A stretch of 63,511 nt of DNA, filler included, from Platydemus manokwari (taxonomy: Eukaryota), in assembly GCA_037951405.1 (NCBI GenBank). It is 5 parts of 5 records of this genome, joined end to end, with 100 filler letters (N's around TTAATTAATTAA, not from the genome) between each part and the next. Parts side by side here need not be neighbours in the genome. Positions count along the whole stretch, not along the records: positions 43,678 to 63,511 come from JBBMOY011733619.1; 4 more parts are not named here. One strand, 5' to 3'. The notes beneath the pieces were generated by a model. It did no database searches. It had not been told where the DNA came from and worked only from the letters and a program-made list of their open reading frames with translations. The position numbers were made by a program, and so were the translations under genes. The number at the start of each line of letters is the position of its first letter. The stretch's first letter is position 1. Shown in pieces: positions 43,678 through 63,511 of this stretch.

Positions 43678-44413
43678 TAATATTATCAAAAAATATTCTT
43701 ATTTTAAATAGAATTTGATTGTTCCATATAATAATCCATGATATTTTAAAACCATAAAAGAATAAAAGCATAAATATAGAAGTAAATGACAAAGTGTAAA
43801 ATGAAGCGTAGAATTTTCTTATCAATGATGGTTTATCATTCAAATAAATGAATTGAGAGATATGATGAATTAGTCAAATGTCAATGTTGATTTTCAATCT
43901 CACAATAGAATGGTAAATAAAGCAAATATAAACCGTGATATCAATTGTTTTGTTTGTGACTGAAAATTTTTAAAAAACTACTTTTCTTACTAAAGAATAT
44001 TTTAAAATTTTTCATTCGGTTATTTGTTTAAATATAAAGTTTGAATATCTGTATAGACTGAAATTCTGACGTCATTGATATCCATCTGAAATTATATTAA
44101 GTGTTTTAATTCTCTAATCAAGAGGTAAGTGTATTAAAATGATGAAAATTCTTTTAAAATGTTAGTTGCTTCTATTTCATTAAATGTGCATTGGATAAAG
44201 ATTTTTAGAAGTCGATTTTTATGAAAATTTTTTATCAAATTGATTAAAAGTTATTTTTAATCTTGAATAATTATCAAAACTTGAAAATCCTCATATAGAA
44301 CAAGTTTCTCTTTTATGAAGTACACTAATTCAGATGTATATTAACTGAGCCATTTGATTATAGTTAAATCTTTATTTTTTACTTTTCAAGATTTCATAAA
44401 ATCATATTTCTAG

Positions 44414-47186
44414 TCCAAATGGTGAACTGGACACCCAACAGATTTATCAGATTTTTATTTCGAGTGGTTTGAGTACAGAAATTCTGGGATCAATTTGGTC
44501 CGTAATCAATCGCACTTCACCCGGTAAACTGACTGTTTTGGAATTTTCAGTTGGTTTGGCAATGGTGGCTATATATCAGGAGCGATCATTTACTAATGGA
44601 TCTGTTACTTCATTTATTCCATTGACATGGAACCAAGTAATTTCCAGGGGTAAATTTCATGTTCCAAAATTATCTGTCGATAAACCGAATGCATCGAATG
44701 GTATTGATCTATTCAATATTAACTTGCCAACTGATAATAAAATATCAACATCAACTAATGAAATCTCAACAGACAACGATAATTGGGCCGATTTTTCTTC
44801 GTTTGTGTCATTCGATCGTGAAGTACCTGAAATAGTTGAGACTACAGAGGTATAAAATAAAGATTTATTTTCACATTCAATTGTGTTATATTTATTATTT
44901 TATATAACTTTGAACTAAACAAAATTTGAATTATCATGTGAGTTTTTTTAATGAAGTATTCTTTGTACTGATATATAATAAAATTAATTAATGATAATAA
45001 AATGAAATCATTATAAAACTTTATTATTAATACAACACTGTAGAGATTATTTCTATCAATTTTGAAATGTTATATTATAAAATGGCTTTGTATTTAAGTT
45101 TTCCCCATCTTTGATATTGGATTGATTTTTATTGGGATAAAATTTATTGTTTTCATTATATTCGTTCAAAATTAAATATATAAATCATTTTTGAATAAAT
45201 AACCAGAAATTAATGAAGAAGAGGACACCTTATTTTATAATTTGTTCTTAGATAAATCAAAACCAAATTGAATAATATTTTATTTTGATTTGGATTCATA
45301 CAGCTTCATTTACATACTCACGATATTATTAATTATTATTTGTAAAACTTTCTACAGCTGAATATAATATTGACGAGAATAGGCTATATTTTACTGAAGT
45401 CCTTAGTGTGATTTTAAAGATTCAATATTATTCAATTTCGTGTATAGTTTGTTAATTTATTTCAATCATCTCAAGATCTCATCAGATACCAAACATCAAT
45501 CAATAATGGAATTGGAAAATATCAACCAATCTTATGATATTCAAAAGCAGATCAATAATCAATTTTCTTCCTGGGAAAATAATATCAAATCTGATAATGC
45601 CTATATAAACTTATCTAATTTTGTTAATGATAATCTCCTGCAAAAGCCAACTATAACTTCCACAAATCCAGATTCGTTATCTATTTCCAGTAACGGGAAT
45701 GTAACCATGGCGACGTAAGTTATATAGATTTGATTAATGTTTCGAACTTGAAATTTATGAAAAAAGCCGGAATAAGGTTTTCAAAAATTAACTTGAGTAA
45801 TGAATTTATAACGTGTTATTTGATAAACATTGTAATTATATATATAACGGATCCATAAATATAATTGAGATTTTATAAATATATTTCTCGATAACTGTAT
45901 TGTTTTTAATTAATATTCAAGTATGTTCTAACAAAACATAATTATTAATAAAATGTAGAATGATGTCATATCATGCTTTGCTACACTCAAATAACATTAG
46001 ACGAACACGTATTTTTGAATCGTTTTAAATGTAAATTTGTAAAATTATTTTTATTAGAATTCTTCACAATGATTGTGTCAACTTTATTTTATATAAGTAA
46101 TCAGAAAATTGGGTCATTTTAACAGATATTAAATCATTTTATTATTAAACAACAATGATTATTTGATTCAAAATATATACATTGCATTCTGCACGTTTAG
46201 TTCATTGCATTTTATGAATCCGATATTTTCACGTTGTTGTATATCTTTGACATAAATAGATTTAATTATTTCATATATCGATAAAATTGTTCTTTTTATG
46301 GTTAAAATTATTTATTCTAAAATTCATTAGCGTCTTTTGATTAAACGATATCCATTATCATGAAATTATATACAAATCATTTATCCGATCTTGTTTTATT
46401 TTATAGCATTATATTTATTCTTTATCATATATGAAACAAATCGAAATCCTTCCGAATATAATATTACTGCCTTTTTTATAGAAAATCATGTTTTACAAAT
46501 GTAAACTTCTCAATTTTTGTTAGTCAAATGTATAGTGTAATGATTTGTTTGTTTAAACAAGATATAAGTGGTTATAAATTTATAAAAAAAGTCTTGGAGC
46601 ATCATTTATAGGTAAAACGATCTTTATTTTGTCTATGAAAAAAAGGTATCATTTGGCGCCGTTTCAAACTATTAATAAATTAAAGTTTTTATTTAAATTG
46701 ATTTGAGGCATTTTTGTATTGGAAAAATAGTCTCATCAATCGATTATTATTGATAATTATTTGTTCTTAATGATCTTAAAAATACTAAAATTTATTTAAT
46801 ATATTGATATGAAATTTATTTGTAAAATAATAGAATGGCGCTAAATAAGTCTAATGTTGATTCTGATTTCGGTGACTTTCAAATATTCACATCATCCCAA
46901 CCAGTTATATCAACAAATGACAGCCTTAATCTTAATTCTTCAAAAGTTGTAGTCACAGATCGTTATCAAATTTTTAATTCCGAATTAAAGGTATACCTTT
47001 GTTTAATTGATATTGTTTTTTATGATCATTAGGATCCACAAAATAATCTCATTGATCAATGGCTGCGTTGTTTAAATCAATGTCAAAATATCATTGCTGA
47101 CACTGTTAAAGTTTTAAACAGAGTTAGCGATATATCAATAAAAGTTGAAGTTTTCAACAGTGATAAAGGAGTTCTTTTGCTTTCAG
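44414..47186 (+). CDS. SYNRG: synergin gamma (AP-1 gamma-ear binding EH-domain protein), partial
   Basis: Exons 44414-44849, 45476-45714, 46834-46990 and 47033-47186 have matching phases. The EH-like domain ELDTQQIYQIFISSGLSTEILGSIWSVINRTSPGKLTVLEFSVGLAMVAIYQ matches SYNRG IDTAKLYPILMSSGLPRETLGQIWALANRTTPGKLT. Adaptor-ear binding motifs DNWADF and DSDFGDF are present. QWLRCLNQCQNII...LNRVS...VEVFNSDKG matches the start of the SYNRG C-terminal domain. First and last exons not located. Confidence 0.85.
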
Positions 47187-50151
47187 GTAATAAAACTAAT
47201 TATGTTGATCTCTTTTAATTTTCGCCAATCTATTTTTGCACACAATTTCTATAGCCTAAAAATTTATTTGAATAACTCTATTTTAACCTATCTGATCATA
47301 TGAGATTAATATGTTCCTTCCGATTAGAAAAATCAATTAATTCCATATTTTCTCTCGGTTAAATCATTGTGTGACTATTTATTTCAGTTTTTCATAATTA
47401 TATGACATCCTTGAACATTTTATAATTTCAATGATTGAATTGATTATATCTTGAGTGTAATTTCACTCAAAATATTTTACATCGGATTAATTTCGTTAAT
47501 CTGGTTAGTGTGCATAAATTCTCCTGACACACAAAGCCATTTCAGCATTATGGAAACAGAAACGAAGGTCAATGTATATACCATTACTGACTGTTTGAAA
47601 ATCATTTCACCGCATTGAATATTTCTGAACTTTTATTTTGATGTTAGTTTTGTTTTATTTTTTTAGACTTATGTTGGATTGGCATCTATTTTTATTGTTA
47701 TGGTATTGGCTGGAATCGTTGCCGATCCATAAAGTATTTATGCTTAAATTTTTCTATGAATGGTGACATTGTTATTAATCAGATAATGCTTCGGATAATC
47801 AGAAATCTTTTTTCGTAGGTCATAGAAAAAAAATTATACAAAATTTTCAAAATTACGAGTTTCTAGTATTCAGACATGTTTCTTATCGAATGATCATAGT
47901 TAATTATTATTTTATATAAAACTCACTGAATCCTTATTTACAAAATATGTTATAAAATACCGGTTTGTACCAAGTTCTGATTGATATCTAAAGTCATCTT
48001 CGTCACATAAAGTATCATTTTGTCAATGAATAAACAATTTTCTTTTCTGATAATTTCCCATATTTTGGGGCTAAAAGCTCATTAGAAAAATTAAGTTTAC
48101 ATTGCAAAAAATAATAATTTTTATATCAGAAATTCCTCTTGTATTTGTTATAGTCTAAAACTCTGGAAATATTTTCGACCGATTTCAAAGTAAACAAGAT
48201 ATAGTTTTCCATTTTCTGTTTGGAATGATTGAGAGGACACATGTAAAATAAATCGATTTAACAAATAATTTCTCCAGTTTCATTATGAATTATTTAAATT
48301 TCAGACACCTTATTTTTAAAATAAATTACACAGATTTTCTTTTATATTCAACAGGCTTACAAACTTAAATAATGCACACCCACTAGTCATTCTCACGCCC
48401 AGTCAGGTAAATTTACAAATATTTTTGTAGAATAATTATGTAAATTTTAATTGATAGGCTCTTTCACGAATTTAACCTTTAACAGTACCTCTGGTACCGA
48501 TATTATTAGTATCAATCAGATTACTTATTACATTGAAGATTGCATTTATTTCAAAAACACAAATTTTAGTTATATCTAGTTTTTTAAATATTTTATTCAG
48601 AGAGAATATTTTAAAAATTAATGACTATACATAAGTAAATATACCTTTCATAATTGTAATTACTTGTATAGTTGCGATGATTTTGGTGGGGGAATAGAAC
48701 AATTTTTCAATGCTAAAAGGTGTGTTTGAATTGAAATTTCTTAGAATTCTGTATAATCCTAATATTTCATCAAACGAAACTTTACGATAACAAATTGTAA
48801 AAATATAAATTTATTATCTATATGAAATTACTCGAATATTACTGACCTATAACTTAACACCACGATTTGTTCATGCATTTTTAATGTCGATGAAAAAAGG
48901 CTTGACGAATATTCAAGTTGTTCAAATAAATCGTATTTTACTGAGTACCTTTCAAATTGCATAAGACAGAAAAATTTTACGTGAAATAAGTAAACTTTTA
49001 AATTATCTGATATTTATAAATTAGTCGATTAAAATATTAATCTCAAAATATTTGACCATTATCCATTTCACAAAGGTTTTATGTAAATGTTCAATAAAAT
49101 TTTTATGGATATTTTGAATGGTTTTCCGTTCGCGTCCCAGCATCTAAATTCGATGCTGATAATATTAATGCAAGAAATACACAGAAGACAATATGGAGAA
49201 AATTAAGAAAACAGAAAAAGAAAAATTAGATATTTAAGAGAATTCTACATAAAATATAGAGAATAAATAGATGTATGTTTATAGATAAATATATCGAGAA
49301 TTCGATAAAAAGAATATAATTGATTTCAGGTAGAGAGAACATTTAAAAAAAGAATTCTATATATCAAAAATGTGAAGAAAATCAAAAATTTGAGATATTT
49401 AAAATCAAATAATATTTAAATTGTCATTTTAAGTAAAAATATATTTGTATTGGAAATGTAAATGATGAAAATAGTTTGTTCAAATGCTTTTGATTAAAGT
49501 GACTTTGTGGGTTAAACTTCTTAAACCGTTTATAATTCTTATTTCTGAAATCGTAGCAGTAATAAATATAAAATAATGTTTAAAAATTAAATTATCATTT
49601 ATACATTTGTATACAGTTATACTCATTTTTATGGCATAAAATTAGTTTTTAGAATTGGCTTATCAGGACATGAGACTGATTATTTGTGCTATAGGTATTT
49701 GTGTGGATTTTTGTTGTTATTATATTTTTGGATATGATGCGACTTCTATTTATAGATTTTGATTGAATTTTCATTAAGATATAGAGGTCGGGTAAACAAT
49801 TTTAATTTTAATGCAATTAAATTTTTTCATGTATATCTTTTATTGAAAAATTTGGTTAGCCTTTATTTAATGTTTAAAATTTTCTGTACTTATTTTTTAT
49901 AATTATTTAATTGTTCGGATGGCTCAGATGGTTCCCCACATAATTTTATGAAGTTGTGTGATTAGTATTCATATAATTAGTCTGGTGAATAGATAATGAT
50001 TTTTCCCCATTTGAATTAATAAACCAATTTCCAAGAAAAGTAGTAAAGAATAGATTTTATTCAATAATATTTATTGATATTTTAGACAATATAAAATTTG
50101 ATTTAAAAAATTTAATCAATTTATCATCTGACCGATTGTCTTTAATTATTT

Positions 50152-50988
50152 ATGGATTGTAACGAGAATGATTTAGAAATATCGTGTTCTAAATGCTTCA
50201 AAATGACCAATGAGTTGTACTTTAAAAGTGCAAATTGTCAGCATCAATTTTGTAGTAATTGCTTCCAAAACAATTTATTATTCAACAATCAATGCCCACT
50301 GGATGATACGACACTCAAAGATATTCATGTAATGGAAGGTGCAGTAGTTAAAGAAATCGCATCTATTACAAAATTAGAAAATGATTTCGTCAATGATCAA
50401 TTGGAGAAACTGGAATGGGAGGCAGAATCATTTAGTCAAGATATCACTGAAGCTTTAAGTGAAATAGAAACAATGGAATCTGCAGCTAATGATTTTGAGA
50501 ATTTAACATTATCAATTCTTAATAATCTGATATCGTATGTGGATAACCCTGTTGATGATAAGCTTGAAGAAGAAAAACAAAACGTAGAATCGTTATTGGA
50601 AAATATTTTAGGTATTAAGGAATATAAGGAAGAAGCTGAGAAAATTCATGAAGAAATAAATGATTTTGTCTATCAGTTGTCAAGTTTTGTTCCACAAGAA
50701 ATGAGAGGTTATTTAGTTAATCTTTATCGATTGAGTGTTTGGAAACGAGAAGTTTCTGGATCCTTTTTTTCTCTATGGAACTTGATCTATGAACAATGGA
50801 AGATAATGTATAGAAAAATCAATGAATGTCTTAACAGTTTGGACAAAAATTTAATAAAATTGACAAAGAATAAAATAGTAAAGAGTAGTATGATAATGTT
50901 GAGAAGAATTCACAAGCTTAATATTAATTTGGAGGTATACGAAAATATCAATAATCAGAGTTGTGAATGTGAAATGAATGAGGAATGA
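50152..50988 (+). CDS. intronless RING-HC (C3HC3D) finger protein with acidic coiled-coil region, 278 aa; putative E3 ubiquitin ligase
   Basis: Clean ATG-to-stop ORF with CSKC-x13-C-Q-H-QF-CSNC-x10-CPLD, followed by E/L/N-rich heptad-like helices. TATAAAA at 50090-50096 and AATAAA at 51075-51080. Confidence 0.8.
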   Translation: MDCNENDLEISCSKCFKMTNELYFKSANCQHQFCSNCFQNNLLFNNQCPLDDTTLKDIHVMEGAVVKEIASITKLENDFVNDQLEKLEWEAESFSQDITEALSEIETMESAANDFENLTLSILNNLISYVDNPVDDKLEEEKQNVESLLENILGIKEYKEEAEKIHEEINDFVYQLSSFVPQEMRGYLVNLYRLSVWKREVSGSFFSLWNLIYEQWKIMYRKINECLNSLDKNLIKLTKNKIVKSSMIMLRRIHKLNINLEVYENINNQSCECEMNEE

Positions 50989-51299
50989 CTTCACCTTTAT
51001 TTTTGGTAATAATTTTCATTGTTATATTTAGAATTTCTGTGAAATTTTATTTACATGGCTTCTCTTTAATGATAAATAAAACATTATTTATCAATATATT
51101 TTTTTATTTTTACACTTTGAATGGAAAATATTGCGTTCAATTAGTAAGGAAATTAGAAAATAATGTTTGCAAAATGGTAATGGTAAAAATAAAGACATAC
51201 AAATAGAACATAAAACTTGATTATTATAATAATCTTAATAATATGATTTATTATAAAATTATAACATAAAAATAACATACACATAAAATCACACCAAAA

Positions 51300-54200
51300 G
51301 TTTGGTTGGAGCTCGGTCATTTTAAATCTATTTGATTCCGTTTCCTGAGACTCTATGAACCAAATTGATAATTTCCGTGAATATGCAACCCAGCTCGTTG
51401 GACACGATTGATTATGATAAATGTTCTGGAATCAAGGAAGAATGACTTCGTTCGAAAAAAACACGCAAAAGTAGATTGGTAATTACAGCAATGAAACACC
51501 AGAGAGTGCTTTCCGGTAATAAGAAGATAATCGTAAACTTGGAATTGTAAACTTGAAATCGTGGCCTTGGAATCGATGTTTTTATTTAAACAAAATAGCT
51601 TAAGAAGAATTGAAAGATGGAAAAGAGATAGAAAATGCATACATTAAATAAACAATATAAATATCATGAGACTGATGGTAATGATTGTTATGATAAAATA
51701 ATAAGGAAGGTGAATGATAAGTATTCTAAACCAGACTGAAGAAAAATTAAATTTTCAATGGTATTGGGTATATCACAAATCAATCAAAAGGGTTACGAGA
51801 ACCAAGGAAAGAATTATAAAAAGGGTCGATACACACAGGCCCAATAAGCACATGTGCAGTGAGGCAGTCAAATTCGTTCTAATATTAATCCATATTTAGA
51901 AGCTAAAAATCGACAGACCCATACCTATAGATGGCAGCAAGCTCAAATATCCGCCAATGGCACGAGAGATGCGAGGAAAATTTCAAGTAGACCGATCTAT
52001 GGACAAATTCAGCATATTGAAAACGAAGATCCGTGACATCAAGCAGACACATTCGATAGATTTATAAAAGAAACTGAGTTTCATGAATAACTGCCAGTAT
52101 TTTTGGTCGGTTACTTGGGTGTTAAGCTTATCTTGGTGTGATTTTAAGTAATCAGTCTTTTTCATTACTTTCTATTCTGTTTTTGACTTTCGGGTGCTGA
52201 TTTGTGTGATTTACCATTGTGAATTGTAAAGAGATTTACTTGTAGTTATTGAGATTACTATTGTGACATTTTGGATAATACAGTTTTAAAATCTAATTAA
52301 ATGGTTAATACACCCAACACTGAATATTGATTATTCGTGCAGGTAAGACAGAAGATATTTGTGGTAAAATTCTCTTTGAATGGTTGATATGGTTCGTATA
52401 TATGTGATATACATGGAACGCTACTTGTGTGATGAGTATAACTTACAGTCGGGAATTACATTTTTATCCAACTCTAACAGGGTCAGGGGTTTATTGTTTT
52501 TAGAGTCCCACTGTTCCAGAAATTCAATATTTAATACATTGAAATAAGAGTAATGAAGACTTTTCCATCAAATCTCAGAATGAAGTTGCTGATGTTTGAC
52601 CTGATTGTTTGAAGGTTAACTAGAAAGTTTTTAAAATTTGAGGTCTAGAATTGCTGCTATAAGTTTTTCGAATATTGACAAGTTGAGTCTCGGCATTTAC
52701 ATTCATTACCGTAGGAACTGACTAATAGGATATAGAAGCATATTAATTCTCTAGTAAAGGTAGCAAATTCATGAAAATATGATCCACAGTTTAAATAGTG
52801 ATATACTACTCTAGATAAATTAATTACATGTCAAATTTCGAGCTATGTGCCACTTACCGAAGCGTTGGGAATGGAACTGTGTTTGTCTATATTTGCATTG
52901 GGACTAAGTTCTGCTTAGCCGAATTAATATTAATCCTATGTAGCACTTCTGTATCTTGACTATAGAAAACAACATCTAACAATCAGATTGCTAGAAAACT
53001 TTCGGACGAAAAGCAAATGAACGGTCATATTTAAATCCCTGGAAAAGATGATTCGAATTCAATGAAAGAAAAAGGAAAGGTGATTATGTTGTATTTTATT
53101 AATTATTGATAAGGTATCTGATATCTATGTGTGTAGATAGGATGGTTCCAAACAGTATCACAATTGTTGCTTTATCATGCTCATTAAAATGATATGTTGT
53201 ACTTATGCAATTGTAAAGTGCTGGATCATCATGATAAAGTGATTATTGGAAGAGTTCTCTAAATGATTTCATGAGGGAAGCATAGCAAACCTTCTTCGAA
53301 ATCGAGCGAATACAGTTGTGAGATCACTTTGCTCAACCCTAATTTTTGTCGCTAGATAGCGAGGTAGGCTATGTACTCTGGTCATCCAACGTGAAAAAGT
53401 AGAACCTTTTGATCTCTTGGAAACCCTATTTTATAGACGGAAATTTGAAACATTTTCAAAAATCCTGCAAGATGTGCCAAAAAACACAATTGGATAAGAA
53501 CAAGAACAAGATTTATGAGAGATAGAAATCTTACTTAGTTCCAAAATTATTTTGGTTTTGGATGAAATCTATCAATCCGGTACAAGATGTTAATTATACA
53601 AATGGAAATGGTTGTCAGTTAGAATAGGTCAGACTTGAGAGAAAGAAAGTAAACTTTCCCGTCCAAAAAAGAAAGTGAAGCTGGTGGTATAGCAAAATGT
53701 AATTAGTGCATGGGTGGAAATTAGGTTTCACAACGACTTTGAGATTAGTTTCATAATTTTTCCAGAGACAAATCAGATTGAGATTTATAAAGGTGAGAAT
53801 TTTCTCGGTTTAATAAGACTATATTTGCTTACTATTTTTACAAATGTGGTCATCAAGTGGGGTTGTCTTCATCGTAGAATTTACCCATATCTAGTTGATT
53901 TTGAGATATGCAGTTCTTTATTTCAGCACAATCATATAAGTTATACAACGACATTCTATATGAAAAGTCCACCAAAATGTTTTTCATTTTTAATTACCAG
54001 ATATTTTTGTGAATATTTTAATGCTTTGAAAGAAAGGCCATATTCTTGTGGACAGAATCCACATCAAAAGTGAATCACAAGAAAGAAATATAAAACCTAG
54101 GAATAAGAGTCTTGAAAAGTAAGTCTTATGGTCGGAATCTCGGGAAGTAAATCTTTAAACACTTGGGTAGTTGATGAGTTTTGTTGAAATGCTGAGAGTT

Positions 54201-54550
54201 GTAGAAACCAAAGTCAAAGGAGGTTAAAACGAAGTCAACAAATTAAGATGAGTTAGCAATAACGGAATCATATGGTTATGGAGCGAATGAGCTGAAATAT
54301 GGAATACAAAGAGAAGAATCAAAGAGCTATGAAATAATGTTGAAAGTTTGACATCATCCAAATGGTGATAATTAAATGTGATAGAGACAATATTGTGATG
54401 TGAGTAGTGGAAGAATATAGGTCAAGGGAATCAATGCAATACTGAACGCATATTAGCAATTGGGTTGATTTTGTACATTGATTTGTATCGAAAAGTTCTA
54501 ACAAAAGGTTATAGTGTGTAAAGCATTCGAAATTTATGGTTATTTATTAT
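51300..54550 (-). mobile_element. probable heavily decayed non-LTR retrotransposon
   Basis: Compositionally distinct from flanks. RT-like motif ghosts occur on the minus strand in the expected order: SN*QP/ISIC..NILYRI (~53625-53575; cf. NWRPISI..ILYR), IGFPRD (~53425), LYSLDFEEGLLCFPHEII (~53315-53262; cf. LD...AF.S.PH..I), and later RFQG (~51570). Many stops; boundaries approximate. Confidence 0.4.
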
Positions 54551-55199
54551 GTAAGGTCTAGATATGATTTTAGCAAGATCGAATCCCTGATGACGTTATA
54601 CTGTGATGTTAACAATAATAATCGAAATATAATTCAGAATCTAAATTTTTTATTAGACTTTGATTTTTAAATCAAACTCCATCACGAATCTGTCAATGAA
54701 GAATGCTGATTTTGTAAGTAAAATTTTATAATTTTATTATCATCAAATTCGACTGCAATATTATTCAAATTTAAGATGTACCACATTACTCCATTTTAAG
54801 GAATTGCATACAATAAATATCGATATTTAATCCCAATACTAAATCTTACCGTGAGGATTATGATAAAACTCTTTATACTCTGAGCAAATTCATAAGATAC
54901 TTATTCTTGGAGTCATGTCTTAAGTCAAGTTATGTTTAAATCATGCCAGAGTTCTGAAGTATTTTGGTAGACTGATCTGACTAAATAGATGAGATCAGAC
55001 AATATGTTTTTAATATATACTCTAAAAACTCCACGAGTCAGCTTAATGAAAATATATCAGACAAGATTAGTACATTAACTTTCTCTACATTTGGATTATA
55101 ACCTCAAAAAAGTATTATTTCTTTTACTTAACCACCAACTTCTCGAATTATGACTTCGGAGAATTGATGAAATACATATATATGGAGGTTAAATACATG

Positions 55200-58100
55200 T
55201 CTCGGTAAATTTACCTTTATTTCTAACATATCTGAGGTGTTCTTAATAACATCCTTCTATGTGCACACGTTTATAACTACAGTGTGAATGCTATCAATTA
55301 TATAGATATTGAGAGATTTAGTGCTATCATTCAGCGATTTGAAGTAAATGGCATAGTCATTATTACTGAATCTGAATCCATTCGAATAGCTGCAACTGTA
55401 AGCGAAAATTCTGAGAGGAATGTTCAAAATCTAGTCCAAGGTTTTTACAAGGACCAACAGTAATAAAAATACATTTACACTGATTTCGTCCGGTATCTTG
55501 ACTTTATACAAACTGTGTGAACAAACTTTCGATATAGAGCCAATTGCAGTTAATCAAATTATAAAAAAGCTCAAATCCCAAAACTTTGAACCTCAGAAGC
55601 AAATCTTTAATAGAGTTTTTGGAAAATCATTTTTATATCAAGAAATTATGATTCGGAAATCAGTAAAACTGATTATAAAACAATTTCAAATTGGATGCCG
55701 ATGTCATTCTTAAATTAAATATGTAGAATTTTCGCGAAAATTTAGCTGGTTGCAATTGCGTAGCCATCAGCAAAAGATTGAGTCCTGGTAAAAGAGGAAG
55801 GGGAGTTTTTGAATGTTTCACTAATTACAATTGTTAGGTTTCTATGGTTCGAGACTATTACACGCTGTCGGTAATCAATCCAGCATGTGAGTTCGATCTA
55901 TTTACCTAAAATCAATGTTTGATCTGGTGGAAGAAATGAATACATTTATTTATACGCTACAATGCACAAATTGATTTAATTCGATAGTGTAATTACTTTA
56001 GATAAAGGAATTAAGACCAATTAGAGAGCAATTTAATATAGATTTTAAGAGCTGTGTACAAATATAAATAGGAATAGTTTTTCGTAGGCGATGTGTAAGA
56101 CAGATCAAAACTTGGGATGAGAGTAACTTGAGCAAGTTGAAATCAATCTTGATATATTTATTGTGCAGTTGCAGGGATTGCTGCAAGTCCGGTTTGGAGA
56201 TGTAGACATCATATAATTCCAAGGATGATTATTCGATAGATAAGGTTATAGGTGAGGTAGTTGATATTTTGTTTGACACAATGATTGGTTGAATTTTTTC
56301 TCACAAATGATAATAATTGTTCTGCTATTGTACCTTATATTGGTAATAAAGAGATGATACCAAATTCAACCAATCAATTTGGTGATAGGCTCCTTGATTA
56401 CTTACTCGATAGTATGGTTGATGAGTGCATAACACACCATTGGAAAAGTCACATTCCGTTCTCGGACTTGGATGATATTGATTACACTTATTTCTCCAGC
56501 AGTTCTGATTTTGACTCTATGATCATGAACATTTCTGTAGGTGTACAAATTGTTTTGGAAAGTGATAATGACTCTTTCATCTTACCACCGTCAATTGTTG
56601 ATTCCAAAGACCTAAAATTAGATATGAGTGTTTTTAAACCTTTTGGTAGAATTAATAACTATTCCTATTTCTGATATAGAAATAACAGATCTCTCTATTA
56701 TTTCTGAGACGCCAGTAATGAAAATCTTTACAGTTTGCTCTAACTCAAAGGTTTGGTGTTGTTTGTGTCAAAACAGAAAGAAATTTTTTGTCATACACTG
56801 TAGTGCCAATATTACAGTGGAACGAAAACACTTTGCTACAATTCATAATCTGACAGATATTAATGATCTTGGAATAACTTACCATAGTGGTTTTGTTGTA
56901 AATATTGTTAATTTCAAGCTACTACTCAAGTAGAATCTTGTAAATCTTTGACTTTAAATGACGAAATATTGATGTTATTACAGTTAAGGGAAGACGATCT
57001 TACTTCATGATGACTAAGCGGGCCAGAGATTGAAGGTTATATCCGTCTTCTATTGTCTGATAGGAAAGGTATAATTTCCATTCCGCCTCTTCCTACTATA
57101 GCTATTGCCAGTTGTAAGTCGAATTTATTATATGATTCTTTCCATTTCGTAATATTGGAATAACGATTATTACCTTGCCTTCATTGCCAATGCTGGTAAA
57201 CAAAAATCTTTCCTAACAGATCCCGCAAGGAGTGAGTTATCAGAAGAATAAATATTTTTATGGGACAAACTTAATTGGATCTTGGAGCACTTCTTTCTAA
57301 TTTAAATATCGACGTTCCTTTTTCCGAAGATCTTTTCACAAATGAGCCAATTTCTGTTGAAGAAATTGCTTCTGCTTTCAAAACCTCGAAAAATTCTACT
57401 ACTGGTAATGATAGCTTGTTGTCCAAGGATTGATGTGAGATTGATCCGAAATTTGTGTTTTTGCATAAGTTCTTTAATTTAATGTTAAGTTCAAATCGTG
57501 TTCCGGATCAGGGGAAACAATTTAAGACTTTTCTCATATTGAAACCACTGAAGGATGTGCAAGCACACTTAGTATCATCTTGGCGACCAATAACGCTAAT
57601 GAACAAGTCCAATAGATTGTTTTGTAACATTATTAACATTCGTATGCTTCGTTGGATTACCAGTAAAGATTTAATCTCTGGGAATCAAAAAGCACTTTTA
57701 TCTGAGGATGAATGTGCTAAGCACAATGCATGCCTTTAATCCATTTACAAATCTTGTAAAATCTCAAAGGGAAATTGCCATTTCGTTTGGTTAGATCTTA
57801 AGGAATAATTTCCTAGCTTCCCTCATGAGTTAACTTGGTTGACTCTGGAAAAGATGGGTTGTGCATCCAGCACAATCAATCTTCTGAAGAATTTGTTTAG
57901 TGGCGTGAGTACTGCATATCACTGTGAGAATATAATCATTCCTTCTATTGATTTGGTTAAAGGTGTCAAACGAGATTGCCCCTTGTCAAAGTCATTGTTC
58001 TGTTTATCGATAGATTTCCTTGTTAAGTCCTGTAATAATTTGAAGAGACTTCTCACATTATCTAATATGAAAATTTCCATATTGGCTTATGCTAAAGACT

Positions 58101-59783
58101 TGGTAGTTGTTTCTAGTGATGCAGCAGGGATTAGGTGGAATAGGTTAGGTGGAATTGTGAATCTGGCTAGTAAGGTTAATCTTACTTTTAATTCAAGTTA
58201 ATGTGTATATTTCTGTAGTGATCCGGTGAAAAGAACGGTTCTCAGAATATACGATAGTGATATTCCAGTAGTGGATGAAAAGAACCTATATAAGTATCTT
58301 GAAGTTCCGTTTGGATTCCCAAAGAGGAAAGATATTGGTGACATTTTAAATAATGTCATCTCCAACTTCGAGGTGATTTGCACCAAGGACTTACATCCGA
58401 GCCAAAAGCTAAATGCTTTAGAGTGTTTCTACACTCTAGACTGCTTTTTTTTTATCTTCAAAACAGAGAGGTCAGCATTTTATCTCTTTCCTCTCTACAC
58501 AAGAGGAAAATAGGTGGTAAGCCCAGGGAACTCGGGTTCGATGAAAAGATTAGACCGTTGGTTAAGAAAGTGATAGAAGTTAGCTTTTTTCCTGCAGCCA
58601 ATAATGATTTTTGTATACCAGAAAGATGGGTGGTCTTGGCCATATTATATTAAGAGTATAGTAGGAGGTTTTCGGTTGTTGAACAGTTTTGACTCTGTCT
58701 TTGATTGATCGCACTAGTGAATAAGCGTTTCAATCTTTCTGAAGTTGACGAATTCCATAGGGCTTGTGACTGGCTAAATAACACAATTGATGATGATCAT
58801 GCTGGACCAGGCTCTTGGTGGTCGAAGGTTTGGTTGAGGGTCCGAGCTCTGTGGAAGAGAGAAAAAGGTTTTAATTTCGTCTTGCTTGAAGGACATATAT
58901 TTGTTATAGTTATCTGCAGGGATTCACAGTATATGATAGACAACAAAGAGAAGAATAAATTGTGTTTTATTCTTCCTGATGGGTTTGGTTTCTTGAGTTT
59001 TATCTCTTGAACTGAGAAAAATTTCCAGGGTATGTTAGTTAAGACTGTTGCGCTATCTAAGATTTCAATGGGAGTCTTGAACTCAATTGTGTTGTCCCAC
59101 AGGTTTGGTCTTTTTTACAGCTGAATTTCATTCCTTTCTGTGTAATGCAGGGTAAATATTTAAATTACAGTCGGTGCGAGACTGCAGCGGAATAGATAGC
59201 TCACGTACTCAACTATTGCATTGGTAACCGTTATGGGGTGACCTTTAAGCAGTGCTTGAAATTTTGGCTCAAAGGCTTATTGCTTTAGGATATAATGTAG
59301 ACATCGACCGCTCATCAAATGAGGTGAAGACTTCCTTACGTCCTGACTTAATAATCCAAACTCCGGGTAGTAGAAACATGAAAAAACATTCCTTTCTCCT
59401 AGATCTTAAGGTCCCACTTGATAAGGAAGAAAACTTTAGGAATAACGTGATGAGAAACGACCGAAAGTATGAAGACCTAGCAGTTCAAATAGCTAAGCAA
59501 TTCAGAACTTTAGTGAGTGTGCATGTGTTAAAGGTAGTTGTTTAGGAACATGGGATCCACAAAATAATGGAGTTTTGAATAAAATAGGGTTAGATAATAA
59601 GAGTTCAAATGACTTGGCTTCACTTCTTGTTTCTACTTCTATTATAGAATGATATATAGGTTTTATAGATCTCAAATAGAGAAGGAGGCTAGGCCTCCTA
59701 TAAACAACCCCGCCAATATGTCTAACACACAATAACGGAAAAAATGAGGGCTTGTACACACGTAAAAGGGATACCAGTATAGG
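55200..59783 (+). mobile_element. pseudogenised non-LTR retrotransposon with RT and restriction-like endonuclease (R2 group; NeSL/Utopia-like)
   Basis: Ordered RT motifs: WRPITLMN..RLF, NQKALLSEDECAKH, WLDLK..FPSFPHE, GVKRDCPLSKSLF, LAYAKDL (YADD), YKYLEVPF, LHPSQKL. Then a CCHC ghost YSRC....E*IAHVLNYC (~59166-59219) and RLE motifs LRPDLII, LLDLKVP, KYEDLA, LGTWDPQN. Multiple stops and frameshifts; ends at a (TAT)n tract ~59784-59806. 5' boundary approximate. Confidence 0.9.
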
Positions 59784-60623
59784 TATTATTATTATTATTG
59801 TTATTGTCGGTTGTATATAAGGTGTATGTAAGAGACAGTATCGTCTTTTCCACATTTCCATTCATTTTTATGCAATCGTAGAGCGCATTTATCTTGATTG
59901 TTGAGATCATCTCTTCATGGAGAAAAACATGGATAAATCGATTATAGGATATCGAATAAATATTACCTTTTATTTTCATTTTATATCAGAAAAATATCGC
60001 CACGGGGATGAGTTTTATTATTGTTACATAAGCATATTTTGTTTTTTAGATTTTAGCCTGGTAATTGATGATTGCGGAACGAGAAGATAAGACTAAAGAA
60101 AAGCGCACAGTGAACATATTCATACCCGTGAAAACCGACTACAAATTACAAAAGTTGGACTATAAAAACCAGAATTTCGGACTTTGATTTTCAAAAGAGA
60201 AATTTTTGTTTTGAAATAAATCCTTGTATCTTCAAAAAAATTCACATTTTTTACATTTCTTTTATTTTATAATCTATAATCCACTGTTCTATAATGTATT
60301 CAATGATAGTTGCGTTACATTTTGAACCAATTTTGCTTAATTTTTAATTTGATATTTATAAAACAGCTTTTTCTATTGAGACATTCCATTTGGTTCTAAA
60401 GGGTTTGATATTTATCGAAGACATACAATGTACTTTGCATTTTTCAGGCATTTTTCAGTATGACTTAATACTACTCGTAAACTTGATTTATTTTTTGTTT
60501 GTATTGGGAAGGTAATGAAATTCTTAATTTTTTAACTTTATATATATATATATATCCTAATCTAAGAGGTATGTTAATTTATTTGTCAGATAACGATATA
60601 ATATGACAGCTTATTTTTACCCA

Positions 60624-60714
60624 GCAGCTTGTGAGGTTTAGTAAAAAATACTTAATTTACATAAGATTAAAATTATAAAATTAAAAAATATTTTTAATAA
60701 ACCTCACAAGCTGC
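60624..60714. repeat. 91 nt inverted repeat / hairpin
   Basis: GCAGCTTGTGAGGTTTA (60624-60640) is the exact reverse complement of TAAACCTCACAAGCTGC (60698-60714); pairing continues imperfectly inward. Confidence 0.9.
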
Positions 60715-61552
60715 AAGATGTCTTTTGCTTTAAATATAAAAAATAAAGAAGTTTTAGCAACTAACACAGCCCAAAATCAATCGATATATAATAAGCCAAA
60801 AGATCGTAATGAAATTAATTCAATAAATGTATTACCAGACTCGGTTAAAGTGATTTCAATCGTTCTGGAAAAAGTGTTTCGATCCGAGTTTATCAAAAAT
60901 TGTTGATAATTAATTAATTTTGAGTAATGGTGTATCCAAGATCCTTCAATATCTACAGATTAATTTAGTTATCTGTCATAATCATTCGAATCTATTCTTA
61001 TTGGTTTTATATAAATCTTAGTTACTTTATTTTTAAACGATATATTGTAAGTTTATTTATCAAACCAGTTATTTTTGTAAGTTATATCAAATGAGTATGG
61101 ATATTAGCAAGTTGTGGCGAACGACAACAAATTACTGGATATCTAAAATGAATGGTTTTTTAATTAAAATGATGATCAAAAATGTACTTGTATAAAGTAA
61201 TTCCGTGTATAAAGTAAGAAGCATTTAGGATAACGAATATTTTTAAATCTAAAATATTCTTAGAATTTGAGTTTAATTTTCTTGTCTGTATAGATCTATG
61301 CGATATTTTAGAAAATTCGTTTCGATCGTTTGAATAACAGTGAAAGAATTTATGGTCAACTTGATGGCTAACCACTAAGTTTTTTAAATACTGAATTTCA
61401 TTATAAATTAAGTATTGAGGGAAAATAAAAAATTAAATAAGTTATATAATTCCATCATTTCATTTGTACACACTATTAATACTTTAAAATAAAAAAGTTA
61501 GAAATGAATATTAATAAATAACGATCGATAATTTTAAAGGTTTATAATATAA

Positions 61553-63213
61553 ATGGTATGAATATGGAATAATAAATTAAACATCATACTTTGATGAAAC
61601 GATTTGATTTTTAGAAGGAAATCATCTCGATAAATATCGGTCAATCTGGAGTACAGTTAGCCAATGCTGCATGGGAATTGTTTTGTATCGAACATGGTAT
61701 CAGAGCAGATGGCACAATGCACAGTGCTATAGAAAACGATGAAACCGGTTATGAAACCTTCTTCAGATCTACAGAATGCAACTATATTCCACGAGCAATT
61801 TCAGTTGATTTCGAACCAACAGTTATAGGTTTGACATTATCTTGCATTAAGTTGTAATAGATTTCATTATTAATATTAGATGAAGTTCGCGTTGGTGCTT
61901 ACAGGAAATTATTCAATCCCGATCAACTGATCTCAGGCTTTGAAGACTGTGCCAACAACTTTGCACGAGGAAATTTTACTGTTGGTAAATCGTTCTTGAA
62001 GCCTGTTATGAAACAAATCAGAAAACAAATAGAAAGTTGTGATAGTATGCAAGGATTTTGTTTTTTAAATAGTTTTGATGGCGGTACTGGTTCTGGATTT
62101 ACATCTGCTGTTCAAGAAGAATTGTCTATGATTTTTGGCAAACGTCCCAAGTTTCAAATTGGAATTTACCCATCTCGTCGAATGGCTACTAGTACTGTTT
62201 ATCCATACAATGCTATATTTCATACTCATTCGACAATGACCCACACTAATTTGAATGCTTTAATGGATAATGAAGCTATTTATGATATTTGTACAAAGAA
62301 ACTTGATATAGAAAGACCCACATATAGCAATATAAACCGGATTATTGTACAATTATTTAGTAGTATAACCATTTCCGCTCGATCAAGAAATCTTATAAAT
62401 AGCGATTTGGATCAGTTATGTACAAATTTAGTTCCTTACCCACGAATCCATTTCCCTCTTTCACATCTTTCGCCTCTATTAAGTGTAAATAAAGCGGATA
62501 AAGAATCGTCAAATATTACTGACATGACACGAGATATATTCGATGCAGAAAATCAATTAGTTCAATGCAACTCTGCAAATGGGAGATACATAGCTTGCGT
62601 ACTTCAATTTCGAGGTCCGATACCACCAGCTCTTGTTAATAAAACCATCATTGAAATTAAAAACCGAAGTGATGTTAATTTTGTAGAATGGTGTCCAACA
62701 GGATTTAAAATTGGAATCAGCAGTATGCCTTCAGCAAGTCCACCGGGTAGTGCATTAGCTCATATGAAGAAAACTTTGGCAATGTTATCAAATTCCACTG
62801 CTGTAGTGGAAACGTGGATTGATTTGTTAAAGAAATTCGATTTGCTCTTTGCCAGGCGATCCTTTATTCACTGGTTTGTCGGTGAGGGATTGGAGGAAGG
62901 AGAATTTCTTGAAGCTTATCAAAACATAAAATCATTAGAGAATGATTATTTGGAAATATCTTTGTCGGAAAACGAAATGTCTAAAGGTGGTAAAATTCCA
63001 ACATCAAGAAGCTTTGAAATTACTGAATCTAGAAGTGCATCAAGAGGAATGAGCAAAAGCAAGTCAAAAAGTAAAGAGTCCAATTTATCGCAATCAAGTC
63101 TAAACAAATCATCGAAATCACCAAAAACAACAGCAAAAACTCAATCGAAATCACCAAATAAATCATCGAAATCTCCAAAGAAACCTCAATTATTTCCACC
63201 TCCTAGCAAGTAA
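61553..63213 (+). CDS. TUBA: highly divergent alpha-tubulin with basic C-terminal extension, 516 aa
   Basis: Exons 61553-61555 (ATG only), 61615-61828 and 61880-63213 (1551 nt). Introns fall after codon 1 and within the D76-equivalent codon, both positions known from animal alpha-tubulin genes. Alpha-type motifs: WELFCIEHGI, FEPTVIDEVR, GGTGSGFTS, DNEAIYDIC..LDIERPTY, TNLVPYPRIHFPL, FVEWCPTGFKIGI, FIHWFVGEGLEEGEF. Confidence 0.93.
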
Positions 63214-63511
63214 ACGTCTCCCATTGATTGTATTGAATATCTAAAATCATGATATCTTAAATCTATTATACTTATCAGAATATTTAAATGAATTTATTAA
63301 CTGACTATCTTTGCAGGTTTTAAACCTTGTCTAAAATTAATTTCAATCAATTTAGTGATTGAATAAATAACTGAAATATCTCATACACAAGGAGATAATT
63401 TTCCATAATTGTTATTTTTTGATGAATGTCCAAAATAAATAAAGTTTTCGACTTTAGATTTAGTATTTTTGTGTGGCAAAGTTAATTGTGAAGTATAAAT
63501 TTGAGAATTCA

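What the first reader, a model, noticed from the sequence alone, without database searches (positions are those of the whole stretch)
62980..63213. Acidic EEY tail replaced by a 77-aa basic Ser/Lys tail with SPK repeats
Seen: after LENDYLEISLSENEM the frame continues SKGGKIPTSRSFEITESRSASRGMSKSKSKSKESNLSQSSLNKSSKSPKTTAKTQSKSPNKSSKSPKKPQLFPPPSK (16 K + 3 R versus 3 E). An internally duplicated unit (AAATCATCGAAATCWCCAAA at ~63106 and ~63160) builds part of it. There is no terminal Tyr and no glutamate-rich stretch. Established: alpha-tubulin E-hooks are acidic and carry detyrosination and glutamylation; SPK(K) motifs are CDK sites and DNA-binding motifs of histone H1 and sperm histones. Inference: the charge-reversed tail could act as an intrinsic, phospho-regulated MAP that binds neighbouring acidic tails or nucleic acid. 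Together with Q254 this hints at a specialised stable array, e.g. the cortical microtubules or 9+'1' axoneme of flatworm sperm.
Basis: partly seen in the sequence, partly recalled or inferred. Interest (0 to 1): 0.8.

Follow-up and report, generated by a model that had tools for sequence, protein, structure and literature searches.

The report
Alpha-tubulin with basic serine/lysine tail
A fast-evolving alpha-tubulin gene, most likely from a flatworm, really does end in a positively charged serine/lysine-rich tail instead of the usual acidic one, and related species keep the same kind of tail, so it looks like a selected feature of a specialised microtubule protein.

Summary
A three-exon alpha-tubulin gene (ATG 61553-61555; exons 61615-61828 and 61880-63213) runs without a break from the tubulin body into an 83-residue tail. 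The tail has 24 Ser, 16 Lys, 3 Arg, 5 Glu and a net charge of +14. The stop codon is 63211-63213.

The tail is coding and maintained:
- Two orthologues (84% and 83% identical) carry tails of 73-89 residues that are also Ser/Lys-rich and basic.
- Synonymous sites between window and orthologue are saturated, and the tails no longer align.
- The tubulin core is under strong purifying selection (dN 0.05), so this is not a pseudogene.
- The GT sites proposed as splice donors are not conserved, and no acidic exon lies in the remaining 298 bases.

The SPK/CDK/H1 reading is not supported, because those motifs occur only in the window species.

The gene belongs to a wider group of alpha-tubulins that lack the catalytic Glu (E254Q) and have long tails. 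The group includes deposited planarian sequences. Its tails range from -31 to +14 in net charge.

No RNA data were available. Expression, tissue and mechanism (a cationic, phosphorylatable tail on a stable microtubule array) remain inference. I rate it a new variant of a known kind, of moderate to high interest.

The parts
61553..61555 (+). Start codon, alone at the end of exon 1 (ATG|GTATGA)
   Evidence: sequence. The same ATG|GTA(T/A)G arrangement occurs in orthologue L001 and paralogue-type locus L002. Splice dinucleotides were checked.
61556..61614 (+). Intron 1, 59 nt, GT..AG
   Evidence: The position is conserved in L001 and L002.
61615..61828 (+). Exon 2: residues 2-72 plus the first base of the Asp codon. 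N-terminus is MKEI, residue 40 is Ile (61729-61731) rather than the acetylatable Lys
   Evidence: translation. Pfam Tubulin E 4e-12.
61829..61879 (+). Intron 2, 51 nt, phase 1, GT..AG
   Evidence: The same position holds in L001 and L002. It joins EPTVI|D|EVR.
61880..62958 (+). Exon 3, tubulin core up to the end of helix H12 (..DYLEI)
   Evidence: Pfam Tubulin and Tubulin_C. E 6e-128 to solved alpha-tubulins with a gapless alignment. dN 0.053 with saturated synonymous sites against L001.
62413..62415 (+). CAG codon: Gln at the position of catalytic Glu254 (context D-L-D-Q-L)
   Evidence: Q is invariant in all group members.
62959..63210 (+). C-terminal tail, 84 codons, Ser/Lys-rich, net +14. 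Same exon and same frame as the core
   Evidence: Orthologous tails in P0001 and P0003.
63111..63183 (+). Internal repeats of ATCGAAATC(A/T)CCAAA encoding the (K)SSKSPK / QSKSPN units
63211..63213 (+). Stop codon TAA
63347..63442 (-). Block conserved with the orthologous locus, 133 nt downstream of the stop. Either the last exon of a convergent gene or a 3'-UTR element. It contains no acidic coding potential for the tubulin.

Best explanation
This is the genuine, selectively maintained C-terminal tail of a divergent alpha-tubulin isotype. Shown: the gene (516 codons in three exons) encodes a complete alpha-tubulin fold under strong purifying selection. It has Gln for the GTPase-activating Glu254 and Ile for Lys40. 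It has no acidic E-hook and no terminal Tyr. Instead it carries an 83-residue low-complexity Ser/Lys tail that three lineages keep open, of similar length and net positive, although its sequence has turned over completely, in part by slippage of 9- to 21-nt AAATCN-type repeats. It belongs to a group of Q254 alpha-tubulins with long tails. The named members of that group are planarian, and tail charge across the group ranges from -31 to +14. Inferred: the protein builds a specialised, slowly or non-hydrolysing and therefore stable microtubule population. The tail removes the substrates for the tyrosination cycle and for polyglutamylation or glycylation. It replaces the anionic surface with a flexible cationic brush that can neutralise neighbouring acidic beta-tubulin tails, favouring close packing or bundling. 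About 24 serines could tune or reverse its charge through phosphorylation. The male germ line is the most likely site, but this is not shown.
For: Gene model and frame. Alpha-tubulin identity. Orthologues with Ser/Lys basic tails (net +9 and +4). Same exon structure in L001, where the tail is again contiguous with the core. Core dN 0.053 and 91% aa identity with pS 0.86 (saturated); tail 37% identity with all indels in frame. Stop-free chance is 0.002 for the window and 0.0007 for L001. Ser enrichment (z 7-8.5) and the same codon-position periodicity in both species. Tails are not alignable by BLASTP (E about 1), so composition rather than sequence is kept. Slippage repeats. Wider Q254 long-tail group including S. 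polychroa Q7Z1L8 and D. ryukyuensis A7M6D9. Canonical alpha-tubulins form one clade with 100/100 support, and all Q254 forms fall outside it. One group member lies on an intron-less contig, which is a spliced transcript that includes its non-canonical tail. E254 is the GTPase-activating residue, and its natural loss together with a long tail is interpreted as stabilising in Toxoplasma alpha3: PMC10056924.
Against: There is no RNA evidence for this gene or its two orthologues; the only run holding the locus is DNA contigs. Tail omega is about 0.45 and positional conservation is essentially nil, so selection may act only weakly. Other members of the group carry hyper-acidic tails, so a basic tail is not required for whatever the Q254 core does. 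Helix H12 stays acidic (net -7 against -9), so the motor and MAP surface is only partly altered. The phospho-regulation, bundling and testis parts are inference without data. The structure prediction was uninformative (pLDDT 35).
Confidence: 0.6

Rival explanations
1. The tail is translated but is functionally near-neutral. Once this isotype no longer needed an E-hook, replication slippage of A-rich AAATCN repeats produced a tolerated low-complexity extension. Its Ser/Lys make-up reflects the repeat unit rather than selection for charge.
For: Tandem 9-, 21- and 33-nt repeats lie in the tails of both species. The tails are not alignable. Tail omega is about 0.45 against far below 0.1 in the core. 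Paralogue-type members have entirely different tails, ranging from acidic to neutral.
Against: At saturated synonymous divergence, three lineages still have open tails of 73-89 residues, all Ser/Lys-rich and all net positive. The stop-free probability is 1e-3 or lower in each species. Hydrophobic residues are depleted relative to shuffles in both. A short K-S-S-x-S-x-K stretch lines up in all three.
Confidence: 0.25
2. The tail is a nucleic-acid or chromatin-binding module of SPKK or histone-H1 type, regulated by CDK.
For: The window tail has KSPK, KSPN and KSPKK, giving two full S-P-x-K sites, and it is strongly basic.
Against: No S/T-P site is present in either orthologous tail. There is only a single SPKK, whereas such motifs act in tandem arrays. 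The Atlas and Pfam searches find no H1-like signal.
Confidence: 0.05
3. The tail is not in the mature protein. It is removed by splicing to an undetected acidic last exon, or the mRNA ends differently.
For: GT dinucleotides exist at 62964, 62979, 62987 and 62990, and the last fits G|GTAAAA. The piece ends 298 nt after the stop, so exons further downstream cannot be excluded. No RNA data exist.
Against: The orthologous DNA has no GT at the equivalent place. No donor-acceptor combination in the piece gives an acidic tail; the best is a 6-residue peptide. A conserved block, possibly a convergent gene end, starts 133 nt downstream of the stop. Coding periodicity and an open frame are kept in two species. 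A gene model from a third species also reads through.
Confidence: 0.04
4. The gene is a decaying tubulin copy (pseudogene), and the tail is read-through into former 3' UTR.
For: It has lost E254, K40, the first Gly of the GGGTGSG motif and the acidic tail. It is only about 50-55% identical to canonical alpha-tubulin.
Against: The core is 91% identical to the orthologue while synonymous sites are saturated (dN 0.053). Splice sites and the frame are intact. All the 'losses' are shared by orthologues, so they are fixed features.
Confidence: 0.02

Closest known systems
Canonical metazoan alpha-tubulin (e.g. TUBA1B/TUBA4A, PDB 8ixf, 3j8x)
   Same: Same fold and domain order. The alignment to residues 77-440 is gapless and includes the alpha-specific S9-S10 insert. 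It is about 50-55% identical, and helix H12 is acidic.
   Different: It has Q for E254, I for K40, MKEI for MREC and D-GGTGSG for GGGTGSG. The tail is 83 aa and +14, instead of about 12-15 aa, about -8 to -10 and ending EEY. The whole protein sums to about +7 (pieces added), whereas canonical alpha-tubulin is strongly acidic.
Deposited planarian 'alpha-tubulins' Schmidtea polychroa Q7Z1L8 (489 aa) and Dugesia ryukyuensis A7M6D9 (534 aa)
   Same: They have Q at 254, long non-canonical tails (55 and 100 aa) and many shared core substitutions. In the tree they fall outside the canonical clade with the window protein. The Dugesia tail has a basic S/K/R-rich middle.
   Different: They are only 45-50% identical to the window protein, so they are different subgroups. 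The S. polychroa tail is net -13, and the Dugesia tail is mixed (+4) with acidic ends. I found no paper that describes them.
Toxoplasma gondii alpha3-tubulin and its coccidian homologues
   Same: They are natural alpha-tubulins lacking the GTPase-activating Glu (replaced by Q/H), with an altered N-terminal regulatory motif and unusually long, poorly conserved C-terminal tails. The authors propose that they stabilise polymers (PMC10056924).
   Different: They also lose D251, which is kept here. The tail there is 48 aa and is not reported as basic. They come from a different eukaryotic supergroup, so the origin is presumably independent; common descent was not tested here.
Neurofilament-H/M and MAP 'KSP' phospho-repeat sidearms; histone H1 SPKK motifs
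   Same: These are Lys/Ser(/Pro)-rich disordered projections on a cytoskeletal polymer, or a basic DNA-binding tail. The window tail has three KSP units and one SPKK.
   Different: This is an analogy only. KSP/SPKK units are absent from both orthologues, and there is no sequence relationship.

Membership tests
alpha-tubulin | Tubulin GTPase domain followed by the Tubulin C-terminal domain | tested here: met
   PF00091 E 5e-30 (exon 3) and 4e-12 (exon 2); PF03953 E 5e-33.
alpha-tubulin | Closer to alpha than to other tubulin classes, including the alpha-specific S9-S10 insert | tested here: met
   The 60 best solved-structure matches shown are all alpha chains, E about 1e-128, with a gapless alignment over chain residues 83-447.
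alpha-tubulin | Catalytic Glu254 (with Asp251) that activates GTP hydrolysis on the neighbouring beta-tubulin | tested here: not met
   D251 is kept, and residue 254 is Gln (codon 62413-62415). The same holds in all group members.
alpha-tubulin | Short acidic C-terminal tail ending in (E)EY, the substrate of the tyrosination cycle and of glutamylation | tested here: not met
   The tail is 83 aa, net +14, has no Glu run and ends in Lys.
alpha-tubulin | Lys40 acetylation site and MRE(C/I) N-terminus | tested here: not met
   Residue 40 is Ile and the N-terminus is M-K-E-I. The orthologues also lack K40.
alpha-tubulin | Forms heterodimers with beta-tubulin and polymerises | not testable with these tools
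   No partner sequence from this organism was available, and no complex job was run.
Q254 long-tail alpha-tubulin group (informal; named members are planarian) | Gln at 254 plus a C-terminal extension of about 45-107 aa | tested here: met
   Window, P0001, P0003, P0092, P0093, P0095, P0118, P0122, P0133, P0157, P0173 and P0307.
Q254 long-tail alpha-tubulin group (informal; named members are planarian) | Shared intron positions (after the ATG; phase 1 in the Asp codon of EPTVID) | tested here: met
   Window, L001 and L002.
Q254 long-tail alpha-tubulin group (informal; named members are planarian) | Single origin, separate from canonical alpha-tubulins | tested here: inconclusive
   The split of canonical against Q254 forms has 100/100 support, but relations among the Q254 subgroups are unresolved and all are long branches.
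SPKK / histone-H1-type basic DNA-binding tail | Tandem S/T-P-K/R-K/R units conserved among orthologues | tested here: not met
   The window has one SPKK and one SPNK; P0001 and P0003 have none.
KSP phospho-repeat sidearm (neurofilament/MAP type) | Multiple conserved Lys-Ser-Pro repeats | tested here: not met
   The window has three KSP; the orthologues have none. They have K-S/T-x repeats instead.

The most novel reading that the evidence does not exclude
This would be a microtubule subunit with a built-in, charge-reversed sidearm. It is a GTPase-dead alpha-tubulin whose cationic, multiply phosphorylatable tail acts as its own MAP. The tail would cross-link or space hyperstable microtubules, for example the cortical or axonemal arrays of flatworm sperm. 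It might act together with sister isotypes from the same group whose tails are hyper-acidic (-31), so that oppositely charged tails zip neighbouring polymers together.
Probability: 0.15. Interest if true: 0.85.

Novelty: new variant of a known kind. Interest (0 to 1): 0.6.

Why it matters
Almost everything known about the 'tubulin code' assumes an acidic C-terminal tail. Motors, MAPs, severing enzymes and the tyrosination, glutamylation and glycylation enzymes all read that tail. This natural alpha-tubulin is kept by selection yet combines four departures:
- a positively charged tail;
- loss of the GTPase-activating glutamate;
- loss of K40;
- loss of the terminal tyrosine.

It is therefore a ready-made natural experiment on what those features are for. 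The surrounding group spans tail charges from -31 to +14 on similar Q254 cores, which gives matched comparisons. If the inferred behaviour holds, it would show that microtubule stability and spacing can be encoded in the subunit itself rather than in accessory proteins.

Tried and rejected
- **RNA evidence.** The look-up of sequencing runs returned a single run of DNA-like contigs. Laying it only showed one 2383-bp genomic contig spanning the gene with its introns, so expression is untested.
- **Taxon identification.** The neighbouring RING-finger ORF has no homologues. Pfam on other ORFs of the piece gave nothing. No tRNA or Rfam hits were found. Run accessions are not mentioned in any held paper. 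The flatworm assignment therefore rests only on the named relatives.
- **Exhaustive representative search.** The window clade is not a 50% representative of its own. The search added only a few further Q254 members.
- **Structure prediction.** AlphaFold2 on the exon-3 product with a 6-row alignment gave pLDDT 35. I discarded it and ran no fold search.
- **Tail-only searches.** The Atlas feature search on the tail gave chance-level scores.
- **Alternative splicing.** Enumerating splices from the GT sites at 62964-62990 gave no acidic C-terminus.
- **Literature.** Searches for a description of the planarian entries or of lysine-rich tubulin tails found nothing relevant.
- **Joined protein.** All searches used exon references, and whole-protein figures (516 codons, net about +7) are sums of the pieces.
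- **Complex prediction.** No job was run, because no binding claim is made.

Full report
**What is there**

The piece 43678-63511 is AT-rich, with 23-27% GC between genes and about 35% in coding parts. At its right end lies a three-exon gene on the + strand:
- The start codon stands alone at 61553-61555 and is followed by a 59-nt GT..AG intron.
- Exon 2 (61615-61828) encodes residues 2-72, beginning K-E-I-I-S-I-N-I-G-Q.
- A 51-nt phase-1 intron splits the Asp codon of EPTVI-D-EVR.
- Exon 3 (61880-63213) encodes the rest.

Pfam finds the Tubulin GTPase and Tubulin_C domains. The 60 best solved-structure matches shown are all alpha-tubulin chains, at about E 1e-128, with a gapless alignment to TUBA4A residues 83-447. 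The protein is therefore an alpha-tubulin by fold and class, but only about 50-55% identical to canonical ones, which makes it very divergent for this family.

**The observation**

After the H12 helix (..ENDYLEIS) the same exon and frame continue for 83 more codons to a TAA at 63211-63213.
- The whole tail has 24 Ser, net charge +14 and pI about 10.6.
- The internal duplication is real, with three copies of ATCGAAATC(A/T)CCAAA at 63111, 63144 and 63165.
- A stop-free run of this length is unlikely by chance: 44 of 20000 shuffles of the tail's own bases, and 3e-4 with flank composition.
- Ser is four-fold enriched and hydrophobic residues are depleted relative to shuffles. The three codon positions have sharply different base composition.

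**Relatives and selection**

A word-index search found two close relatives:
- P0001 is 84% identical and lies on a 2026-bp Logan contig, L001.
- P0003 is 83% identical and is UniParc UPI0005FF755D, a gene model with a spurious N-terminal extension.

L001 is genomic and has the same ATG|intron and phase-1 intron. Its tail is again contiguous with the core.

Both relatives have long tails of the same kind:

| Protein | Tail length | Ser | Lys | Net charge |
|---|---|---|---|---|
| P0001 | 88-89 aa | 21 | 18 | +9 |
| P0003 | 72-73 aa | 19 | 11 | +4 |

Between window and L001 the core is 91% identical in protein. Synonymous sites are saturated (pS 0.86), with dN 0.053. The tail is only 37% identical, with dN 0.75 and omega about 0.45, and all indels are in frame.

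BLASTP with composition correction cannot align the two tails (E about 1). Yet L001's tail is also improbably stop-free (13 of 20000 shuffles). It shows the same Ser enrichment (z 7.3) and the same codon-position pattern. It contains a 9-nt tandem repeat encoding (K-S/T-x)n.

So the core is under strong purifying selection. The tail evolves fast, partly by slippage, under a constraint on frame, length and composition rather than on sequence. This rules out a pseudogene. It also makes read-through into untranslated sequence very unlikely.

**Could the tail be spliced out?**
- GT dinucleotides occur at 62964, 62979, 62987 and 62990, but L001 has no GT at the equivalent place.
- No donor-acceptor pair inside the piece gives an acidic C-terminus.
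- Starting 133 nt after the stop there is a block (63347-63442) that is about 80% identical to L001 even though neutral sites are saturated. On the minus strand it reads as a short open frame ending in a stop, with several synonymous differences. It may be the end of a convergent gene or a UTR element. Either way it holds no acidic tubulin exon.
- The piece ends at 63511, so exons further downstream cannot be excluded. No RNA run exists. This remains the main gap.

**A wider group**

Among the hits, twelve proteins have Gln at position 254 in place of the catalytic Glu. In most of them Asp251 is kept and residue 253 is Asp. Every one has a long non-canonical tail of 45-107 aa.

| Member(s) | Tail net charge or character |
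|---|---|
| P0092, P0093, P0118, P0173 | -29 to -31 |
| Schmidtea polychroa Q7Z1L8 | -13 |
| P0307 | about neutral |
| P0122 | +3 |
| Dugesia ryukyuensis A7M6D9 | +4, with a basic S/K/R-rich middle |
| P0157 | -6, with an acidic patch followed by a K/S/T-rich end |
| Window clade | +4 to +14 |

- L002 shares both intron positions.
- P0307 lies on an intron-less 1460-bp contig, which is a spliced transcript that includes its tail.
- In a maximum-likelihood tree the canonical alpha-tubulins of animals and fungi form one clade (100/100), with all Q254 forms on the other side.
- The window clade is a 100/100 group on a stem of 0.81 changes per site.
- Relations among the Q254 subgroups are unresolved, and long-branch effects are possible.
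- The only named members are triclad planarians. This is my basis for calling the source a probable flatworm; nothing else in the piece gave a taxon.
- Five of the unnamed members come from one sample (SRR33002330) but differ strongly in GC content. They may be paralogues of one animal or a mixture of species.

**What is and is not conserved in the tail**

The orthologues have none. The shared features are K-S/T-x repeats, high Ser, positive net charge, and one short K-S-S-x-S-x-K stretch that lines up in all three. The H1/CDK reading is therefore not supported. A general 'basic, serine-rich, phosphorylatable disordered tail' reading is supported.

**Mechanism: shown and inferred**

Shown here:
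- Loss of E254, K40 (Ile at 61729-61731), the terminal Tyr and the Glu-rich tail.
- An N-terminus of MKEI.
- A first-Gly-to-Asp change in the GGGTGSG motif.
- A core net charge of +1 against -4 to -7 for canonical cores over the same span, with H12 still acidic.
- A summed net charge of about +7 for the whole product.

Established knowledge:
- E254 activates GTP hydrolysis in the lattice, and its loss stabilises microtubules (PMC10056924).
- From my own knowledge, E254 mutants used in vitro behave the same way.
- Also from my own knowledge, the acidic tail is the substrate or docking site for the tyrosination cycle, TTLL glutamylases and glycylases, severing enzymes and many motors.

Inference:
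- This isotype makes a stable, modification-poor microtubule population.
- Its cationic tail can neutralise neighbouring beta-tubulin tails and promote close packing.
- Phosphorylation of a fraction of its 24 serines could cancel or invert the charge.
- A male-germ-line role is plausible, because planarians have strongly testis-specific alpha- and beta-tubulin transcripts (PMC6467871; PMC12654950). Those transcripts were not shown to be Q254 forms.

**Comparison and novelty**

The closest described analogue is Toxoplasma alpha3-tubulin and its coccidian homologues. They lack the GTPase-activating residues, have an altered N-terminal motif, and carry unusually long, poorly conserved tails (PMC10056924). 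That tail is not reported as basic, and the lineage is unrelated.

Two planarian members of the Q254 group have been in public databases since about 2003-2007 under the plain name 'alpha-tubulin'. I found no paper describing their peculiarities, nor any lysine-rich tubulin tail, in the held library. The library is incomplete, however.

I file the finding as a new variant of a known kind: a divergent alpha-tubulin isotype with a charge-reversed tail.

**Limits**
- There are no expression data.
- The organism is not identified.
- The structure prediction failed.
- The joined three-exon protein was, by rule, neither searched nor folded.
- Tail selection was measured on one saturated species pair only.

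Noticed in passing
window 63347-63442 (minus strand): A block about 80% identical to the orthologous contig L001 (1928-2026), although synonymous sites between the two species are saturated. On the minus strand it reads as an open frame ending in TGA at 63349-63347, with several synonymous differences. It may be the last exon of a convergent neighbour gene, or a conserved 3'-UTR element of the tubulin gene.
   Followed up: partly
window 60624-60714: A 24-nt inverted repeat (96% complementary, 43-nt spacer). Contig depth in the one available run jumps from about 13 to 100-580 here, and many contigs break, so this is probably a high-copy hairpin or MITE-like repeat.
   Followed up: partly
window 50152-50988 (+): An intact 278-aa ORF with an N-terminal RING finger that scores below the Pfam cut-offs (E 2e-5). 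It has no homologue in the 5.8-billion-protein word search. It is an orphan RING protein.
   Followed up: partly
window 57455-59545 (+): A run of broken ORFs in a GC-richer stretch. By eye they resemble a decayed reverse-transcriptase element, but Pfam finds nothing. Their identity is unexplained.
   Followed up: partly
window 61615-61828 (exon 2), codon 61729-61731: The K40 acetylation site is Ile, the H1-S2 loop is two residues shorter than canonical, and the N-terminus is MKEI instead of the MREC/MREI autoregulation motif. Both orthologues share the absence of K40.
   Followed up: partly
L001-L004, L006 (all Logan SRR33002330): One public sample holds at least five different Q254 alpha-tubulin genes, with tail charges from -31 to +9. 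L002 is much more GC-rich than the others, so the sample may contain more than one species.
   Followed up: partly
L005 1-1460 (Logan SRR21676451): An intron-less full-length Q254 alpha-tubulin contig (P0307, 476 aa) with a 45-aa near-neutral tail. It is evidently a spliced transcript, which shows that at least one member of the group is expressed with its odd tail.
   Followed up: partly
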